Source: Octopus sinensis
Lineage: Eukaryota
Direction: 5' to 3'
Assembly (NCBI RefSeq): GCF_006345805.1
Contig: NW_021828928.1
Span: 1-7,188, forward strand
DNA: 7,188 bases
In this document: positions 68 to 7,188 of the stretch, piece after piece
Position numbering within the stretch: the first letter of the stretch is position 1
Layout: each line of letters begins with the position of its first letter
Program-made: the position numbers and the translations under genes
Notes under the pieces: generated by a model
Database searches by the model: none
Told to the model about the DNA's origin: nothing
Seen by the model: only the letters and a program-made list of their open reading frames with translations

Positions 68-275
68 TGTGTCTTTATTTTTGTCCCACTAACATTGCTT
101 GACAACCGATGTTGGTGTGTTTACATCCCTGTAACTTAGTTGTTCAGCAAAAGACACCAATAGAATAAGTACTAGGCTTACAAAGAATAAGTCCTGGGTT
201 CAATTTGTTTGACTAAAGGCAGTGCTCCAGTATGGCCACAGTCAAATGACTGAAACAAGTATACGAATAAAAGAA
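68..275 (+). mobile_element. SINE family A, 3' body only (5'-truncated)
   Basis: Near-colinear with 495-700 (gcttgacaaccgatg...gcagtgctccag...caaatgactgaaacaagta). No tRNA head upstream. Confidence 0.85.
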
Positions 276-295
276 TATATATATATATACATACA

Positions 296-700
296 GGCGC
301 TGGAGTGGCTGTGTGGTAAGTAGCTTGCTTACCACCCACATGGTTCCGGGTTCAGTTCCACTGCGTGGCATCTTGGGCAAGTGTCTTCTACTATAGCCTC
401 GGGCTGACCAAAGCCTTATGTGTGGATTTGGTAGACGGAAACTCAAAGAAGCCTGTCGTATATATATGTGTATGTGTGTATGTGTATGTTTGTATGACTG
501 TGTTTGTCTTCCTAGCATAGCTTGACAACCGATGCTGGTGTTGTTACGTCCCCTTCATTAGCGGTTCGGCAAAAGAGACCGATAGAATAAATACTAGGCA
601 TACAAAGGATAAGTCCCAGGGTCGAGTTGCTCAACTAAAGGCAGTGCTCCAGCATGGCCGCAATCAAATGACTGAAACAAGTAAAAGAGTAAAAGAGAGA
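296..700 (+). mobile_element. SINE family A, apparently full length (tRNA-derived head, internal TA/TG microsatellite, 3' body, AAAAGAG tail)
   Basis: Pol III A-box-like TGGCTGTGTGG (306-316) and B-box-like GGTTCAGTTCC (349-359). Internal (TA)/(TGTA) tract ~459-494. The 3' body duplicates 68-275 and the head matches 2638-2805. Confidence 0.85.
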
Positions 701-788
701 GTATATACACGTACACTATATAAAGACACACACGCATAATATATACATGTCTATGTAAAAGGGAAATAAAATGTTGAAGTTGATATTG

Positions 789-805
789 AAAAGGAGAGAG
801 GGAAT

Positions 806-836
<31 letters not shown>

Positions 837-890
837 GAAAGTAAAAGAAGAGAAGGACATATGAAGGATATAAAATAGGAAAGGAAGGGT
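789..890. repeat. Purine tract containing (AG)11
   Basis: (AG)11 at 813-834 within a G/A-rich stretch. Confidence 0.9.
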
Positions 891-896
891 TGTTAT

Positions 897-982
897 CATT
901 ATTATTAATTACTATTACCATTATTATTATTATTAATTACTATTACTATTATTATTATTATTAATTACTATTACTATTATTT
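897..982. repeat. (ATT)n-derived repeat with a 28-bp higher-order unit (3 copies)
   Basis: TTAATTACTATTAC recurs at 905, 933 and 961. Confidence 0.85.
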
Positions 983-1203
983 GGGTGGTGAGCTGGCAGA
1001 ATCGTTAGCATGCTGGGCAAAATGCTAGGCAGCTATTTGTTTGCCTTTACGTTCTCCGTGCAAATTTTGCAGACATCAACCTTCATCCTTTCGGGGTCAA
1101 TAAAATAAGTACCCTTTGAGTTCTGGGGTCGATGCAATCAATTTACCTGCTCCCCAGAACAAGCTGGCCTTCCGTTAAAATTTGAAGCCATTATTATTAT
1201 TAT
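983..1203 (+). mobile_element. SINE family B copy 1 (tail type 1)
   Basis: Head gtgagctggcagaatcgttag with A-box-like TGGCAGAATCG (994-1004) and a degenerate B box. Core ttcatcctttcggggtcaataaaataagtac. Ends ctggcctt...tttgaagcc(ATT)n. Homologous to 2028-2250. Confidence 0.8.
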
Positions 1204-1206
1204 TTT

Positions 1207-1428
1207 CATGACTCATCTGCCACTACATTCTGAGTTCAAATTCCACCAAGGTCACCTTTGCCTTTCATCCTTTTGGGGTCGATTCAACAACTTCCAGCCA
1301 TGCACTGGAAGCGATGTAATTTACTAGTCCCCTCACCCCAAATTTCAGGCCTTGTGCCTATAGTAAGAAAGTATTACTATTATTATGATGATTATTATTA
1401 TTATATTATTATTATTATTATTATTATT
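1207..1428 (+). mobile_element. SINE family B copy 2, 5'-truncated (tail type 2) with long (ATT)n tail
   Basis: B-box-like GAGTTCAAATTCC at 1232-1244. Core gcctttcatccttttggggtcgat. Ends aaatttcaggccttgtgcctatagtaagaaag then (ATT)n ~1372-1428. Homologous to 2388-2614. Confidence 0.8.
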
Positions 1429-1985
1429 GAGTGAGAGAGCAGTGCATGCCATCAAAGTGACACTGGGGTAAAATATACAAAGCCCAATATACCCATCATG
1501 ACTACCCGTCTGATAAAGGTACACCCGGTACATGCATCACAACCATATGTACGCGACATGGTGATCTCATATCATGATAAACAGCACATGACCTTGCAGG
1601 TGGGGCCCAGTTAGAATTTTCTTCAGGTTGAGTAGCCCATCCCGCTCAAAAGGTCCCTGAATAAGGGTTGTTTAAGGATGTTGAAAGAACCACCCATGTT
1701 TCCAGAGGTGAATTATTCAAACCCCCAACAATCCCTCTCAACACATGGCTATGATGCTCCCCCACTACTTCTGCTCGTGATCAGAGATGCACATAACGTC
1801 AGCCACTAAGGGACATGCTCAACTGGTTAAGGTCAAACAACTGACAAGCAAATCTGTGGTATTGAGCAGAATATTTGCTGTAGCCCATCTTTTATACCAA
1901 GACAAAACAATGTACATGATAACACTTCCAATCAGTTAAGATCAGAAGCCATGAGAGCCACTGCCTGGTACTGCATCGGGGCATT
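1429..1985. mobile_element. ~555-bp non-autonomous interspersed repeat of unknown class, flanked by (ATT)n on both sides
   Basis: Abrupt, GC-richer complex block between two ATT arrays. No credible ORF and no clear A/B boxes. I recall it as a recurrent octopus repeat (unverified). Orientation undetermined. Confidence 0.6.
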
Positions 1986-1990
1986 TATTA

Positions 1991-2021
<31 letters not shown>

Positions 2022-2027
2022 AATTAC

Positions 2028-2250
2028 TGTGACGAGCTGGCAGAATTGTGAGGATGCAAAGCAAAATGTTGAGCGGCATTTTGTCCATCTTTACATTCTG
2101 AGTTCAAATTCCACCAAGGTTGACTTAGCCTTCATCCTTTTTGGATCGATAAATTAAGTACCAGTTGAGTACTGGGGTCAGTGTAATAGACTGGACCCTT
2201 CCTTGAACTTGCTGGCCTTGTGCCAAAACTTGAAATCATTTTTATTATAT
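2028..2250 (+). mobile_element. SINE family B copy 3 (tail type 1)
   Basis: gagctggcagaattg head, GAGTTCAAATTCC B box, core ttcatcctttttggatcgataaattaagtaccagttgagtactggggtc, end gctggccttgtgccaaaacttgaaatcatt. Preceded by (ATT)n 1985-2027. Confidence 0.85.
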
Positions 2251-2274
2251 TAAAAAAAACATAAAAGAAATCAT

Positions 2275-2387
2275 TGCTGTTGTTGTTGTTGTTTTTGCTG
2301 CTGCTGCTAATATTATTATTATTGATGTTGTTATTGTTATAGTTATTGATATTCTTCTTCTTCTTCTTCTTATTATTATTATTATTA
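2275..2387. repeat. Compound trinucleotide microsatellite (TTG)n-(CTG)n-(ATT)n-(TTC)n-(ATT)n
   Basis: Read directly from the sequence. Confidence 0.9.
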
Positions 2388-2614
2388 ATGTGATGAACAA
2401 GCAGAATTGTTACAAAATGCCAGACAAATTACTTTGCATCATTTCTTCCAAGTTTACATTTTGAATTCAAATTCCACCAAGGTTGATTTTGCCCCTCGTC
2501 CTTTTGGGATTGATAAAATAAGAACCAGTTAGGGGCTGGGGTTGACATAATCAATTAACCCCCCACACCCAAAATTTCAGGCCTTATGCCTATAGTAGAA
2601 AGGATTATTATTAT
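2388..2614 (+). mobile_element. SINE family B copy 4 (tail type 2)
   Basis: Degenerate head gatgaacaagcagaattgtta, gaattcaaattccaccaagg, core, end aaatttcaggccttatgcctatagtagaaagg(ATT)n. Confidence 0.8.
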
Positions 2615-2637
2615 CTTCAAAATATTACCAAAAAAAG

Positions 2638-2858
2638 TTGGGGGCATGGCTGTATGGTTAAGAAACTCACTTCAGAACCTTGTGGTCTCAGGTTCAGTCC
2701 CACTTTGCAGGACCTTAAAGAATTAACTTCTTCTAATGTTCCAGGTTGACTTAAGCCTTGTGAATGGGTTTCCTACATGGAACTGATAAAGCCTATGGTA
2801 TATACATGTGTGTGTATATTCATGTATGCATATCTACATTTGTACTTGTATGTGTATG

Positions 2859-2899
<41 letters not shown>

Positions 2900-3083
2900 A
2901 TATGTCTGCTCATGTCTCCTTGTCTTGACATCTGCTGCGAATTATAAACAAATGTCACGTCACACAAACAGTGTCGTTTGTTTGCAGTGTTCCACCAGAA
3001 AACATATCCAACCATTGTGCTGTTCATGTCGGAAGAACTTGGGGAAATATTCTCTTGCTTGAAACCAGCTGAGGATTGGTGAG
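2638..3083 (+). mobile_element. SINE with family A head but a different 3' body (diverged, 3' end missing or unclear)
   Basis: A box TGGCTGTATGG (2647-2657), B box GGTTCAGTCC (2691-2700), colinear with 296-460 up to the microsatellite. After (TG)n the sequence (gtctccttgtcttgacatc...ggggaaatatt...) does not match 495-700. Confidence 0.7.
2861..2898. repeat. (TG)19 microsatellite inside the SINE
   Basis: Perfect dinucleotide run. Confidence 0.95.
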
Positions 3084-3850: not shown

Positions 3851-4723
3851 TCATTCGGCTTGCCGGGTCTTCTCACACACGGCATATTTCCAAAAGTCGC
3901 GGTCACTAGTCATTTATTTGGTGAGGCCTAAAGTTTGAAGGTCATGCTTCAACACTTCATCCCAGGTCTTCCCGGGTCAACCTCTTCCACAGGTTCCCTC
4001 AACCACTAGGGTGTGGCACTTTTTCACACAGCTATCCTCATCCATTCTTGCGACATGACCATACCAGTGCAGTCTTCTTTTGCACACCCCATCTGCTGCT
4101 TCTTAGGACCAATATTTCTCTCAAGGTACTTACACTCTGTTGAGTATGCACACTGACATTACACATCCATTGGATCATACTGGTTTCATTCCTTGCGAGC
4201 TTACGCATGTCCTCAGCAGTCACAGCCCATGTTTCACTGCCATGTAGCATGGCTGTTCATACACATGCGTCATACAGTCTGCCGTTTACTCTGAGTGAGA
4301 GGCCTTTTGTCACCAGCAGAGGTAAGAGCTCTCTGAACTTTGCCCAAGCTATTCTTATTCTAGCAGCTAAACTTTCAGCGCACCCTCCCCCGCAACTGAC
4401 TTGGTCCCCTAAGTAATGGAAGCTACCAACTACTTCTATTTTTTCTCCCTGGAATGTGGTGGAAGTTGTTCTCTGCGCATTTCCAGTGTTTATTGCACCC
4501 TAGCATCTGCCACATACAAAAACTATCTTCCCCATTAGCCTTCCTTTGATATTACTGCACCTCTTATGCGTCCATAGCTTACACTGGGTACATCTTATAG
4601 AGTTTTTACCTATGCCTCTACTACAGATCGAGCAGGGCCATCTACCTGAAGGGGTTTGTGGTTTGCTTGCCTTCCCACTTATTAGGACTTTGGTTTTAGC
4701 TAGGTTGACTCTAAGGCCCTTTG

Positions 4724-4724
<1 letters not shown>
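3851..4724 (-). pseudogene. Decayed RTE ORF2 remnant (reverse transcriptase C-terminus with embedded PHD finger)
   Basis: One frame runs from 4724 to ~4075 with stops at 4500-4502 (TAG) and 4257-4259 (TGA). A frameshift near 4075-4080 follows, then two more stops, and the probable natural stop TGA at 3851-3853 after EKTRQAE. Confidence 0.9.

Positions 4725-4726
<2 letters not shown>

Positions 4727-4756
<30 letters not shown>
4727..4756. repeat. (AT)15 microsatellite at the LINE 5' truncation point
   Basis: Perfect run. Confidence 0.95.
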
Positions 4757-4759
<3 letters not shown>

Positions 4760-4804
4760 ACAGAAGTAACAAAGTGACCCAAGATCTGAAAGTTTCATTA
4801 ATTA

Positions 4805-4869
4805 GCACTTATCAAACTGGTTTTTTGGAGGTATATTCCCAGACCTCCAAACACCACTTTGATGAGTGT
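4805..4869 (+). other. 65-nt stem-loop, pre-miRNA-like geometry
   Basis: 25 base pairs (23 Watson-Crick, 2 G-U), one C-C mismatch, one small internal loop, 10-nt terminal loop (4833-4842). The fold is seen directly; function is unproven. Confidence 0.55.
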
Positions 4870-5190
4870 CAACTCTTGGACCTTGAGTCCCTACTGTCAC
4901 GCCCCTATCACCCCTACCTCTATCTTTCATCTCTCAATCACTCTCTCTTCTTCTTCTTTTTACTCTACTATCTTACTGCTATGATAAAAATTGGCAGTAA
5001 ATCTCTTCTCTTCACCATTCTTCCAATGAAACTAGGGATGTTACTGGACCTACCTGGGTCTCTCCCTAACACCCAGCCACTCCTTTTCATATATTATTAC
5101 CCTAGATCTCTCACCCATCCCAAGGTATATATCAAACCCAGAGACTGAGGGGAACCTTTAGTTTTGTCAAGGACATGGCGATTGTCTCTA

Positions 5191-5356
5191 GTGATGGTGC
5201 CATAAGATGCACCCAGTGCACATTGTGCAGTGGTTGGTGTCAGGAAGAGCATCCAGCTGCAGAAAGAAAACCAGAAAATGTAACTTCAGGCAAGATATTC
5301 TTTGAACCATCCAACCCATTCCAGCATGGAAAGTGGGGGTAAAATGATGATCATCA
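5191..5356 (+). mobile_element. RTE-type 3' end fragment (truncated LINE or RTE-dependent SINE tail)
   Basis: Reverse-complement match to 3381-3518, including exact GCATCCAGCTGCAGAAA (5249-5265 vs 3446-3462) and AGCATGGAAAGTGG (5323-5336 vs 3404-3417). Ends in an ATGATGAT tail. Confidence 0.8.
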
Positions 5357-6218
5357 TACATACATACAGACGTATGGATGTATAAATATACATATGTGCA
5401 TCCTTGTGTATATATTATACACATTCATTCTATCATATATACATATATATGTATGTGTATCCTGAAGAAGGTCTCTTTTATTTTTCATTCCTCCTGGGGT
5501 CAATAGAGTAACAGTTATTATTTCACAGACCAAGGAGGGGTGGAGGATCATTCTGATGATGATGGGTCACCAGAATGTCATTAAACACCCCACCAATATT
5601 TCCTAATCCACCTCATTAAACCCCCAATACTTCATAATAAACTACACCAAGTTATAACTCCTCACCTAACACAAAACAAAACACACTTCACCTGCCAAAC
5701 CCCTTTTTCATACAAACACATCTTTCTCATTGCTACCCAAACATTGTCCCTTATATTAAAGATAATTAAGATGAACCTACCTTTCATTAATTGGGCTTAT
5801 TCATAACCAATCTTTATGATCTCAATCAGCAACAAATAATAACGATCCTCTCAACATGCTGTCTATCAGTGTGATTATATGAAAGCCCATCTTTGGATAA
5901 GCTTTCCGAGTTAATCAATGTTGTGTAAGATAATTGTGTGGATTATATTGAAATGTCGAGAGATTTACAGCATTTGTCAGATTAAGAACAGTTTCATCTC
6001 CAGCTTTATTCGTATCTGTTAATCCAGGTAAATATCACGGAAACCAAGCCAACCATGACTGTCACATCATTTCCAGTGCATATAATTATTAATAATACTT
6101 ATATTCCTGATTTGTAGGGACGTGGTATTTCATTATGCAACCATAAATTCCTGTAAAATATATTAAATCGTTTTAGAAGTCAACACCACATTCTACTTTG
6201 TTAGCAGTGTTTTTCACA

Positions 6219-6448
6219 TTATTCTATTGATATTCCATAGAAATTATAGTTGGCTCTGATTTTTTGCTGAAACGTTTCCTATCGAGATGTCAGATGTATA
6301 CAAACAATGAGATAAACAATGAGAACAAACAACAGATGTTTTTCTCTTTGATCTCATTGTTTGTTTCTGTCTGACATTTCGATATGAAATGTTGTAGCAG
6401 GAAATCAGTCCTGGCTATAATTTCTACCGATAATATCTGTAGAAATAA
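6219..6448 (+). other. Long fold-back / inverted repeat (~230 nt), candidate structured intronic RNA
   Basis: 6238-6313 pairs ungapped with 6351-6426 (60 Watson-Crick, 10 G-U, 6 mismatches). An inner stem spans 6317-6350 with a 5-nt loop, and an outer stem pairs 6219-6234 with 6432-6448. Confidence 0.9.
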
Positions 6449-6701
6449 CCTCAACAAAATATTTATATTCCTTCTTACTCCAAAACTTTTCACCATCACT
6501 TATATTCAGTCAATAAAGATAATGGTGTATTTATATCATCAAGTTTTATTTCTAATGATTATTCCATTGGAAACAGTTTAAATGTTTAACTTCACTGTCA
6601 AATAAACAATTTGTTTAATGTATTTAATGAAATGTGTGTTTTCCTTGAAATTCTTTGAATGAATCAAGTAAATATTATTTTATCAGAAGCTTTTCACAAA
6701 A

Positions 6702-6727
6702 CTAATAAAGTTTTCATTTTATTTCAG
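6702..6727 (+). promoter_or_regulatory. 3' splice acceptor (branch point, pyrimidine tract, CAG)
   Basis: CTAAT 6702-6706, TTTTCATTTTATTT, CAG 6725-6727. Confidence 0.6.
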
Positions 6728-6732
6728 CTTTC

Positions 6733-6738
6733 ATGTAA
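6733..6738 (+). promoter_or_regulatory. ATG-TAA: minimal start-stop uORF, or last codon plus stop of the spliced upstream frame
   Basis: The only ATG between the acceptor (6727) and the main ATG (6845), immediately followed by TAA. Confidence 0.4.
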
Positions 6739-6844
6739 AAATTAGTGAATTTTGAAGAGATAAATTGTATTCCAAAGGAAGAAAACAAAATCCACAGAAA
6801 AGAATATATTTAACAGAAAAAGATAATAATTCTATATTCATAAA

Positions 6845-7188
6845 ATGGAGAAGATTAATGAAGAAAACAAAATATTGGCTCTCATTCCTGCCACAGTCTG
6901 TGATACAACAGCAATTTATAAGGAAACTACACCAATTATTACCCAAATATTACACACACAAAACACAAAGAAAACAGAAGAACAGGAAAGAAAAGACACA
7001 AAGAAATCTAAAGAACAGGAAAAGTCCATGTTACCAAGTTTCCTTCATATTGTGACATGTTACCGAACACTAATCAAAACAGACCACATCAATACGTTTA
7101 TAGATTATGTAAAGGATAAATGTAATCACATGGACTCTCTGGGATTAAATGGATCTCGAATTTTACGTAATATCAAACGTAAAATGCC
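6845..7188 (+). CDS. 5' part of an unidentified protein (>=114 aa, runs off the window): MEKINEENKILALIPATVCDTTAIYKETTPIITQILHTQNTKKTEEQERKDTKKSKEQEKSMLPSFLHIVTCYRTLIKTDHINTFIDYVKDKCNHMDSLGLNGSRILRNIKRKM
   Basis: ATG in strong context (AAAATGG), in-frame TAA upstream at 6827-6829, and no stop in 114 codons of very AT-rich DNA. It contains a frame-preserving 33-nt internal duplication and lies just after a canonical acceptor. Absent from the ORF track, probably because no stop falls in the window. Confidence 0.65.
   Translation, partial: MEKINEENKILALIPATVCDTTAIYKETTPIITQILHTQNTKKTEEQERKDTKKSKEQEKSMLPSFLHIVTCYRTLIKTDHINTFIDYVKDKCNHMDSLGLNGSRILRNIKRKM

What the first reader, a model, noticed from the sequence alone, without database searches (positions are those of the whole stretch)
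6219..6448. Long intronic fold-back whose arm differences are all G-U-compatible on the + strand
Seen: the 76-nt arms (6238-6313 / 6351-6426) align without gaps and differ at 16 positions. Ten differences are transitions, and all ten give G-U pairs on the + strand (6250, 6251, 6252, 6263, 6264, 6269, 6274, 6286, 6295, 6296); none gives A-C. The other six are true mismatches. Extra stems extend inward (5-nt loop) and outward, giving roughly 105 paired positions. Neutral decay of a DNA palindrome should give G-U and A-C about equally; 10/10 has probability ~0.001 for a named strand (~0.002 either strand). The + strand is also the host-gene strand inferred from splice sites, and the hairpin ends ~280 nt upstream of the acceptor. 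Inference, three options: (a) a selected RNA duplex (hpRNA/endo-siRNA or miRNA precursor, ADAR substrate, or splicing element); (b) a fossil of A-to-I hyper-edited dsRNA that was reverse-transcribed back into the genome, since every wobble can be read as a + strand A-to-G change at an A-U pair; (c) a MITE-like palindrome (the core is bounded by TA...TA). Very extensive ADAR editing and miRNA expansion in coleoid cephalopods are established, which makes (a) and (b) plausible.
Basis: partly seen in the sequence, partly recalled or inferred. Interest (0 to 1): 0.8.

Follow-up and report, generated by a model that had tools for sequence, protein, structure and literature searches.

The report
Transposon-derived fold-back in octopus intron
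The long hairpin is real, but it is the internal inverted repeat of a common octopus transposable element that landed beside a gene and was copied more than 40 times with it, and its "G-U only" pattern looks like chance rather than a selected or edited RNA.

Summary
Arms 6238-6313 and 6351-6426 give 60 Watson-Crick, 10 G-U, 0 A-C and 6 other pairs. The + strand folds at -108 kcal/mol against -92 for the - strand.

The hairpin is not a single-copy intronic element. It lies in a 354-nt insertion (6109-6462) flanked by a 10-bp direct repeat (TTATATTCCT). It belongs to a dispersed repeat family with about 700 or more copies in this Octopus sinensis genome. Three dispersed copies carry exact 11-13-bp target-site duplications of their own.

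The insertion sits in a putative 5' intron of an Octopus-specific gene with a large intronless ORF. At least 43 copies exist, mostly 96-98% identical, and they carry the same flanks (a few are rearranged).

Across those copies the stem changes as fast as the flanks (0.219 vs 0.237 events per column). Transitions at paired sites give 11 G-U against 13 A-C, and covariation equals the shuffles. Fifteen dispersed copies give 65 G-U against 62 A-C.

Polarised against the repeat consensus, the ten wobbles are 5 C>T and 5 A>G. At least five of them arose after the insertion, so a fossil of A-to-I editing is excluded.

Verdict: an ordinary transposon palindrome with a chance bias. Transcription, small RNAs and editing were not testable here.

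The parts
6099..6108 (.). Left copy of the direct repeat TTATATTCCT (putative target-site duplication)
   Evidence: Sequence. Homology to the O. bimaculoides paralogue L048 ends at TTAATATTCC.
6109..6462 (+). 354-nt insertion of a dispersed non-autonomous repeat: head, long internal inverted repeat, short A-rich end
   Evidence: Absent from the homologous site in O. bimaculoides L048. The same architecture occurs in dispersed copies on many chromosomes, three with exact 11-13-bp direct repeats of their own.
6109..6223 (+). Non-palindromic 'head' of the repeat (TGATTTGTAGGGACGTGGTATTTCATTATGCAACC ... GTTAGCAGTG ... CATTATT)
   Evidence: Aligns with the head of about 40 dispersed copies. No tRNA or Rfam match.
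6224..6237 (+). Remnant of the outer stem, about 15 nt shorter than in the repeat consensus (TGTTAAGGTTATCTCTACAGATATTCTA)
   Evidence: This explains the imperfect outer pairing with 6427-6455.
6238..6313 (+). Left arm of the fold-back
6302..6325 (+). 12-nt tandem duplication AAACAATGAGAT / AAACAATGAGAA in the apical left arm. It is length-polymorphic among copies (12-, 13- and 26-nt gaps).
   Evidence: L040-L042 lack 12 nt; L037, L038, L039, L047 and O. vulgaris L049 lack 26 nt between direct repeats AACAAACAA.
6314..6350 (+). Apical region with inner stems and the 5-nt loop 6332-6336
6351..6426 (+). Right arm of the fold-back
6427..6462 (+). Right outer stem and end of the repeat (CCGATAATATCTGTAGAAATAACCTCAACAAAATAT)
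   Evidence: The same end (CCTTAACAA[A/G]T) is found in dispersed copies L050, L052 and L056.
6463..6472 (.). Right copy of the direct repeat TTATATTCCT
6028..6727 (+). Putative 700-nt intron (CAG|GTAAAT ... TTATTTCAG|C) that holds the insertion. This is an inference from sequence.
   Evidence: The donor context is conserved in O. bimaculoides L048 and O. vulgaris L049. The acceptor context is conserved in L048 and L098. No transcript evidence is available.
6845..7186 (+). Start of a large intronless ORF (about 1600-1900 aa in full copies) of an Octopus-specific multi-copy family
   Evidence: No Pfam family reaches its threshold.

Best explanation
The fold-back is the internal long inverted repeat of a dispersed, non-autonomous transposable element of Octopus. 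One 354-nt copy (6109-6462) inserted with a 10-bp target duplication. The site is the putative 5' intron about 400 nt upstream of the start codon of the ancestor of a lineage-specific gene with a large intronless ORF. When that gene was amplified by local segmental duplication (scaffold C30 plus small unplaced contigs), the insertion was copied with it. At least 43 near-identical hairpins therefore exist. The arms have since decayed neutrally by ordinary point mutation, partly at CpG sites, and by slippage in the apical repeats. In the lineage leading to this copy all ten transitions happened to be + strand C>T or A>G, which gives G-U pairs. This is best read as a chance outcome seen in the most extreme of 44 copies. 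If the region is transcribed with the gene, the RNA would form an imperfect duplex of about 95 bp. That would be a generic ADAR or Dicer substrate, as any intronic inverted repeat would be. Shown: repeat membership, insertion boundaries, co-amplification, lack of constraint, and the polarity of the changes. Inferred: intron status, transposition mechanism, transcription.
For: (1) At least 40 hairpin copies at 86-100% identity (most 92-98%) lie mostly on C30 and small contigs. Homology runs through 4800-7188 and on into a 1377-aa ORF.
(2) The homologous site is empty in O. bimaculoides and filled in O. vulgaris.
(3) Dispersed copies occur on all large scaffolds: 108 exact and 686 two-mismatch hits of a head-arm junction pattern against 11 control hits. 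Exact private direct repeats of 11-13 bp flank L050, L052 and L055.
(4) There is no constraint among the gene-family copies. Events per column are 0.237 in flanks, 0.219 in the stem and 0.241 in unpaired hairpin. The flank spectrum is strand-symmetric (A>G 22 / T>C 22; C>T 18 / G>A 20).
(5) Transitions at Watson-Crick pairs give 11 G-U against 13 A-C, and 19 transversions break pairs.
(6) The count of structure pairs: 98.4% of cells paired equals the shuffle mean (208/500 shuffles reach it). There is one double change (111/500). Covariation is 0.024 vs 0.023.
(7) Fifteen dispersed copies give 65 G-U against 62 A-C, with single copies ranging from 10:2 to 1:8.
(8) Polarisation: 5 C>T and 5 A>G. 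They arose in three periods: before the type A/B split, on the type A stem, and young.
(9) Apical stem segments of 12-26 nt are lost or gained among copies.
(10) No Rfam family comes near its gathering score. None of six probe strings taken from the hairpin occurs in the held supplements of the octopus miRNA survey.
Against: Taken alone, 10 G-U: 0 A-C is nominally improbable (about 0.002), and the gene-family consensus is already 7:0. Relative to transversions, G-U-type transitions are also over-represented in this lineage (10 of 16 differences). Among the young type A copies, G-U-creating variants are more often shared by several paralogues (7 events, 4 of them shared). A-C-creating variants are all singletons (4 events). 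This is my reading. It is not significant, but it points in the direction selection would predict. The right-hand side of the empty-site alignment is only moderately better than shuffles (z ~2.9). The class of the element is not settled. No expression, small-RNA or editing data could be consulted.
Confidence: 0.8

Rival explanations
1. The sense-strand RNA duplex was or is under selection. It could act as an hpRNA/endo-siRNA precursor, an ADAR substrate or sponge, or a splicing or expression element of the gene family. G-U is tolerated and A-C is removed.
For: The window copy is 10:0 and the family consensus is 7:0. The + strand fold is 16 kcal/mol more stable than the - strand fold. The + strand is the strand of the downstream ORF. 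G-U-type variants are shared by more paralogues than A-C-type variants (not significant).
Against: The stem evolves as fast as the flanks. The copies show 11 G-U against 13 A-C and 19 pair-breaking transversions. Covariation is at shuffle level. Type B copies and the O. vulgaris copy carry two A-C pairs and lack 26 nt of the apical stem. Six non-wobble mismatches are tolerated. The site is empty in an O. bimaculoides paralogue. No Rfam or published octopus miRNA match was found.
Confidence: 0.08
2. The wobbles are fossils of A-to-I hyper-editing. An edited dsRNA was reverse-transcribed and fixed in the genome, so each wobble is a + strand A>G at an A-U pair.
For: Five of the ten wobbles are A>G on the + strand, two of them adjacent at 6400 and 6401. 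The element has variable-length target duplications suggestive of an RNA intermediate. Extensive editing in octopus introns is documented (PMC9699675).
Against: Five of the ten wobbles are C>T, which ADAR cannot produce. 6250, 6251, 6369, 6269 and 6368 changed after the insertion, because paralogues that share the same insertion and flanks still carry the unchanged state. So at most three A>G sites could predate insertion. The paralogues are genomic duplicates with flanks and intron, not retrocopies. Dispersed copies show no orientation bias.
Confidence: 0.03
3. A strand-asymmetric mutational process acts on the + strand of the palindrome. Candidates are deamination of C and A in single-stranded non-template DNA during transcription, or in an extruded hairpin.
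For: C>T plus A>G on one strand is the classical signature of single-strand deamination (established knowledge from mitochondrial and transcription-associated asymmetries). The + strand is the putative non-template strand and lies near the 5' end of the gene.
Against: The flanks of the same copies show a symmetric spectrum (A>G 22 / T>C 22; C>T 18 / G>A 20). The adjacent non-palindromic head shows changes in both directions relative to the repeat consensus (read by eye). Other lineages of the same hairpin gained A-C pairs.
Confidence: 0.07

Closest known systems
Intronic inverted-repeat transposon sequences that fold into long dsRNA (for example inverted Alu pairs in primates, or MITE-derived hairpins such as Made1/mir-548). 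This comparison rests on my own knowledge.
   Same: A repeat-derived, imperfect, roughly 100-bp fold-back inside a putative intron on the gene's sense strand. It is a generic potential ADAR or Dicer substrate, multi-copy, and shows no sequence constraint.
   Different: Here a single element carries both arms. The many near-identical copies arose by duplication of the host gene rather than by transposition. No RNA evidence is available.
Penelope-like elements and metazoan non-LTR retrozymes (PMC8557442; PMC7229834)
   Same: Longer members of the repeat family occur in tandem and inverted, variably truncated arrangements. They carry a motif with the hammerhead core order CUGAUGA - helix II - GAAA. 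Helix II shows compensatory variants (GGAG/CUCC, GGGG/CCCC, GUGG/CCAC). Target duplications are variable at 10-13 bp.
   Different: Rfam hammerhead models do not report the motif even at E<=10. No reverse-transcriptase partner was sought. The window copy has lost the region that carries the motif. Cleavage is untested.
MITEs / Foldback elements (class II non-autonomous elements)
   Same: Small, abundant, with a long inverted repeat that makes most of the element a hairpin.
   Different: The inverted repeat is internal. The element's termini (TGATTTGTAGGG... and ...CAACAAAAT) are not inverted repeats. The target duplication is 10-13 bp and variable rather than fixed, and it is not TA.
Drosophila-type hpRNA (endo-siRNA) loci and animal miRNA precursors. 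The defining features rest on my own knowledge.
   Same: A long transcribable hairpin on a defined strand.
   Different: There is no conservation, covariation or known-family match. The stem is far longer than a miRNA precursor. Small-RNA evidence is untested.

Membership tests
Dispersed transposable-element family (generic) | Many copies in unrelated genomic contexts | tested here: met
   The head-arm junction pattern gives 108 exact and 686 two-mismatch hits on all large scaffolds against 11 control hits. Flanks are unrelated.
Dispersed transposable-element family (generic) | Target-site duplications that differ between copies, and an empty site in a relative | tested here: met
   Window TTATATTCCT. 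L050 AAGTAATAGTTT, L052 GTTACTTTAAGGT, L055 ATCCTTTTGTA. L056 has 12 bp with one mismatch, read by eye. The O. bimaculoides L048 site is empty, although its right side is only z ~2.9 against shuffles.
MITE (class II) | Terminal inverted repeats at the element ends | tested here: not met
   The ends defined by the direct repeats are TGATTTGTAGGG... and ...CCTCAACAAAATAT. The inverted repeat is internal.
   Duplications are 10-13 bp and variable. The TA next to the arms lies inside the element.
SINE | Pol III-type head (tRNA, 5S, 7SL) | tested here: not met
   ARAGORN finds nothing in the window copy or in 7 dispersed copies. Rfam reports no tRNA, 5S or 7SL match.
SINE | Variable target duplication and an A-rich or simple 3' end | tested here: inconclusive
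   Duplications are variable at 10-13 bp. The end is only weakly A-rich (CAACAAAAT, CAGAAAAAAAT). The sense strand of the element is unresolved.
Penelope-like element / retrozyme | Hammerhead ribozyme motif | tested here: inconclusive
   A hand-found core (GGGTG CTGATGA AGGAG CAAAAA CTCCT GAAA TATGGCATATA CACCC) occurs in about 10 longer copies, with helix II covariation. Rfam is silent. The motif is absent from the window copy.
Penelope-like element / retrozyme | Tandem and/or inverted, 5'-truncated arrangements | tested here: met
   Longer copies show head-to-tail continuation and palindromic halves with variable centres. This matches the description in PMC8557442.
Penelope-like element / retrozyme | Autonomous RT/GIY-YIG partner sharing sequence | not tested
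   No search was made.
miRNA precursor | Hairpin of about 60-80 nt with conserved mature arms and a known family or read support | tested here: not met
   The stem has 95 pairs. The best Rfam hit scores 31 bits against a gathering score of 69. None of six probe strings occurs in the supplements of PMC9699675. There is no constraint. Read support is not testable.
hpRNA / endo-siRNA locus | Small RNAs of defined size from the arms | not testable with these tools
   No small-RNA data are available here.
Structured RNA under selection | Reduced substitution rate and compensatory or wobble-biased changes across homologues | tested here: not met
ADAR substrate | Long dsRNA in a transcribed region, with A-to-G differences between RNA and DNA | not testable with these tools
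   The structure is suitable. Transcription and editing are untested.

The most novel reading that the evidence does not exclude
The 43 or more near-identical sense-strand hairpins, one in the leader intron of each member of a clustered Octopus-specific gene family, might act together. They could be an hpRNA/endo-siRNA source or an ADAR sink that regulates the family in cis or trans. The G-U-only pattern of the consensus (7:0) would then be a trace of past selection on the sense RNA.
Probability: 0.06. Interest if true: 0.55.

Novelty: new member of a known kind. Interest (0 to 1): 0.15.

Why it matters
As it stands, this is an example of how a repeat-derived palindrome can mimic a selected RNA. 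A wobble-only pattern in one copy disappears once paralogous and dispersed copies are used as replicates. Two by-products may interest cephalopod genomicists. One is an abundant, apparently unclassified repeat family whose longer members carry a hammerhead-like motif. The other is a large, recently amplified Octopus-specific gene cluster. If the hairpins did yield small RNAs or act as editing sinks, that would link transposon insertion, gene-family amplification and RNA regulation in octopus. Nothing found here supports that.

Tried and rejected
Rfam search of 5800-7188 at E<=1 gave only sub-threshold plant-miRNA-like hairpin matches.

Rfam search of 20 dispersed copies, and of a 141-nt stretch holding the hammerhead-like motif, gave no hammerhead, tRNA, 5S or 7SL match. 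ARAGORN found nothing.

Pfam searches of the large ORF and its O. vulgaris homologue found no domain above threshold.

I considered selection at the level of the element's own RNA as an explanation for the G-U bias. I rejected it because dispersed copies are 65:62 and the sense strand of the element is unresolved.

I considered transcription-associated asymmetry and rejected it because the flank spectrum is symmetric.

I tried to obtain a closer O. bimaculoides homologue. P0011 is not on record. P0024 has an unrelated upstream region apart from the acceptor context.

I searched the supplements of the octopus miRNA paper for six probe strings taken from the hairpin and found none. This is weak negative evidence.

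Loci from the window's own genome are not delivered as files, so sequences were brought into scripts through alignments.

Full report
OBSERVATION. Arms 6238-6313 and 6351-6426 pair without gaps. They give 60 Watson-Crick pairs, 10 G-U pairs on the + strand at the ten listed positions, no A-C pair, and six other mismatches (inverted repeat I1). As RNA, 6210-6455 folds at -108.1 kcal/mol on the + strand (z = -15.2 against dinucleotide shuffles) and at -91.9 on the - strand (z = -11.5). The MFE structure has 95 pairs (84 WC, 11 G-U) between 6222 and 6444, with a 5-nt loop at 6332-6336. CAG|GTAAAT lies at 6025-6033 and TTATTTCAG|C ends at 6727. An ATG at 6845 opens an ORF that runs off the window.

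THE HAIRPIN IS MULTI-COPY AND TRAVELS WITH A GENE. The window is a whole 7188-nt contig of a 2.72-Gb, 13,516-contig assembly. Protein hits on the 15,106,159-nt scaffold C30 are named Octopus sinensis. The 230-nt hairpin has at least 40 scored copies at 86-100% identity, most of them 92-98%. Many lie between 2.8 and 10.5 Mb of C30, and others lie on small contigs. The similarity is not confined to the hairpin. The whole of 5300-7188 is repeated at 93-98%, 4800-5400 is repeated at 91-98%, and homology continues downstream.

In the copy on C12107 the ORF continues for 1377 codons, with further open frames just upstream. Its relatives are uncharacterised proteins of about 1600-1900 aa found only in Octopus. 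Many lie on one 29.19-Mb O. vulgaris chromosome, others are in O. sinensis and O. bimaculoides, and they are called as single-exon genes. No Pfam domain reaches its threshold. So the "intronic hairpin of a host gene" is one of at least 43 copies made by local amplification of a lineage-specific gene. A few of those copies are rearranged and have lost one flank (L006, L009, L017, L035-L037).

THE HAIRPIN IS PART OF A TRANSPOSON INSERTION. An O. bimaculoides paralogue (L048) is 84-86% identical to window 5300-6107. Homology stops at TTAATATTCC, and no hairpin is present. The O. vulgaris copy (L049) is collinear with the window at 94% and has the hairpin. In the window the same word, TTATATTCCT, occurs at 6099-6108 and again at 6463-6472. 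Joining the two flanks gives a continuous alignment to L048: 91/109 identities on the left of the junction and 72/98 on the right. The right flank alone is z ~2.9 against shuffles, so that side is only moderately supported.

A pattern made of the two arm ends finds further copies on scaffolds C2, C4, C7, C16, C17, C18 and C22. Aligned, they share more than the arms. Each has a head of about 130 nt (GTATTTCATTATGCAACCATAAT ... GTTAGCAGTGC ...), an outer stem, the arms, and a common end CCTTAACAA(A/G)T, all set in unrelated flanks. Three of them have exact private direct repeats of 11-13 bp at the element ends: L050 AAGTAATAGTTT, L052 GTTACTTTAAGGT and L055 ATCCTTTTGTA. L056 has 12 bp with one mismatch, read by eye.

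A head-arm junction pattern whose spacing excludes the gene-family copies has 108 exact hits. With up to two mismatches it has 686 hits against 11 for the reversed control, on all large scaffolds. The element is therefore an abundant dispersed repeat, and the window carries a 354-nt copy at 6109-6462.

It is not a textbook MITE, because its termini are not inverted repeats and the duplications are long and variable. It has no tRNA, 5S or 7SL head. Longer members continue into an internal region arranged in tandem and inverted halves. That region holds a hammerhead-like core, CTGATGA - stem-loop - GAAA, with compensatory variants in the stem. This recalls Penelope-like elements and retrozymes (PMC8557442; PMC7229834). 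Rfam does not call the motif, so it remains a lead only.

TESTS OF SELECTION ON THE RNA DUPLEX. The 43 paralogous copies, plus the O. vulgaris copy, serve as replicates of the hairpin's evolution. In a 1-kb oriented alignment, variant events per column are 0.237 in flanks, 0.219 in paired hairpin columns and 0.241 in unpaired hairpin columns. The flank spectrum is strand-symmetric: A>G 22, T>C 22, C>T 18, G>A 20.

Classified by effect, transitions at Watson-Crick pairs gave G-U 11 times and A-C 13 times. Nineteen transversions broke pairs, six events turned G-U back into Watson-Crick, and there was one double compensatory change. On the hairpin alignment, 98.4% of cells are paired, equal to the shuffle mean (208/500 shuffles reach it). 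One pair has changes on both sides (111/500), and the covariation score is 0.024 against 0.023.

Apical stem segments of 12, 13 and 26 nt are present or absent among copies, flanked by short direct repeats as expected for slippage. The older "type B" lineage (L038, L039, L047 and O. vulgaris L049) carries A-C pairs at 6288 and 6289. Within the 76-nt arms the copies range from 6:0 to 11:2, and the window is the only one at 10:0. In 15 dispersed copies with both arms the totals are 65 G-U and 62 A-C, with single copies from 10:2 to 1:8. None of this indicates selection for pairing on either strand.

POLARITY OF THE TEN WOBBLES. I used about 65 dispersed arms as an outgroup. By that test the wobbles are C>T at 6250, 6251, 6390, 6378 and 6368, and A>G at 6252, 6269, 6401, 6400 and 6369, all written on the + strand.

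They arose in at least three periods:
- Five are shared by type A and type B copies: 6252, 6400, 6401, 6390 and 6378.
- Three are specific to the type A stem: 6250, 6251 and 6369.
- Two are young and are shared by the window copy with one or two other copies each: 6269 (also L003) and 6368 (also L004 and L046).

At 6274 the window keeps the ancestral G, while the type A consensus has C.

The editing-fossil idea needs every wobble to be A>G and to have been copied through RNA. Half are C>T. At least five changed after the insertion, in genomic duplicates that keep flanks and intron. That idea is therefore excluded for most sites. Two of the C>T changes are at CpG (6390, 6368).

WHAT REMAINS. 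On its own, 10:0 is nominally unlikely, and the family consensus is already 7:0. A strand-specific mutational bias is not seen in the flanks, and by eye it is not seen in the adjacent head either. Among young type A copies, G-U-creating variants are more often shared by several paralogues than A-C-creating ones (my reading). The numbers are too small to bear weight. I therefore put about 0.8 on neutral decay with a chance bias. The remainder is divided among past selection on the sense RNA, a hairpin- or transcription-linked mutational asymmetry, and, least likely, editing fossils.

Whether the region is transcribed, edited or diced could not be tested. Editing of intronic hairpins is common in octopus (PMC9699675), so this hairpin may well be edited if it is expressed. 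That would be generic rather than specific.

COMPARISON AND VERDICT. The closest known things are repeat-derived intronic inverted repeats that fold into dsRNA. For the element itself, the closest are Penelope-like or retrozyme-type non-autonomous retroelements. MITE membership fails on termini and target duplication. miRNA-precursor membership fails on size, family match and constraint. hpRNA and ADAR-substrate status are untestable here. The finding is a real structure with an ordinary origin: a new member of a known kind, of low interest.

Noticed in passing
window 6845-7188 and onward (L032 258-5735); C30 2.8-10.5 Mb: A large intronless ORF (about 1600-1900 aa) belongs to an Octopus-only, uncharacterised family. 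In O. sinensis it is amplified to 40 or more copies at 93-98% identity on one scaffold plus small contigs. Many copies also lie on one 29.19-Mb O. vulgaris chromosome. There is no Pfam domain, only weak beta-propeller-like hits.
   Followed up: partly
L054 445-520 (+); L051 485-560 (+); - strand of L071, L072, L077, L086, L097, L050: Longer members of the repeat family carry a hammerhead-like core: GGGTG CTGATGA AGGAG CAAAAA CTCCT GAAA TATGGCATATA CACCC. Helix II has compensatory variants (GGGG/CCCC, GUGG/CCAC). Rfam does not report it. The window copy lacks this region.
   Followed up: partly
L009 1040-1500 (C30:2848531-2848991): One locus holds a second, more diverged and inverted partial copy of the same insertion about 400 nt from the first. 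It is joined at the TTATATTCCT repeat. Its arm is a mosaic of left-arm and right-arm states. Another small palindromic element is nested in its head.
   Followed up: partly
L035, L036 (C30 ~15.0 Mb), L037 (C30:9.65 Mb): In three rearranged copies the sequence about 30-45 nt upstream of the hairpin is replaced by an inverted copy of the ORF's 5' part (window ~7020-7110). This creates a larger palindrome.
   Followed up: no
window 5300-6107 vs L048 4316-5388: The region upstream of the insertion is 84-86% identical to an O. bimaculoides paralogue, while the encoded proteins are only 67% identical. This suggests a conserved leader exon or promoter.
   Followed up: no
window 4038-4808 (- strand): ORF fragments here resemble retroelement remnants. 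One has a PHD-finger match (E = 2.6e-6). The other (4038-4250) has a reverse-transcriptase-tail-like sequence by eye but no Pfam hit.
   Followed up: partly
alignment A2/A5, e.g. window 6248, 6272, 6330, 6369: Several variants (6248 A>G in six copies, 6369 G>A in six) are shared by copies that otherwise fall in different sub-lineages. This suggests recurrent CpG mutation or gene conversion among paralogues.
   Followed up: no
copies L020, L028, L030, L043-L046; L032 180-1600: There are many single-base length differences in homopolymer runs between copies, and frame breaks in the C12107 ORF relative to the window ORF. These could be long-read assembly errors or pseudogenisation.
   Followed up: no
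window 213-3062: This stretch is low-complexity and microsatellite-rich: (CA)n around 2770-3060, and A/T-rich runs that translate as poly-N and poly-I at 1345-1533 and 1951-2157.
   Followed up: no
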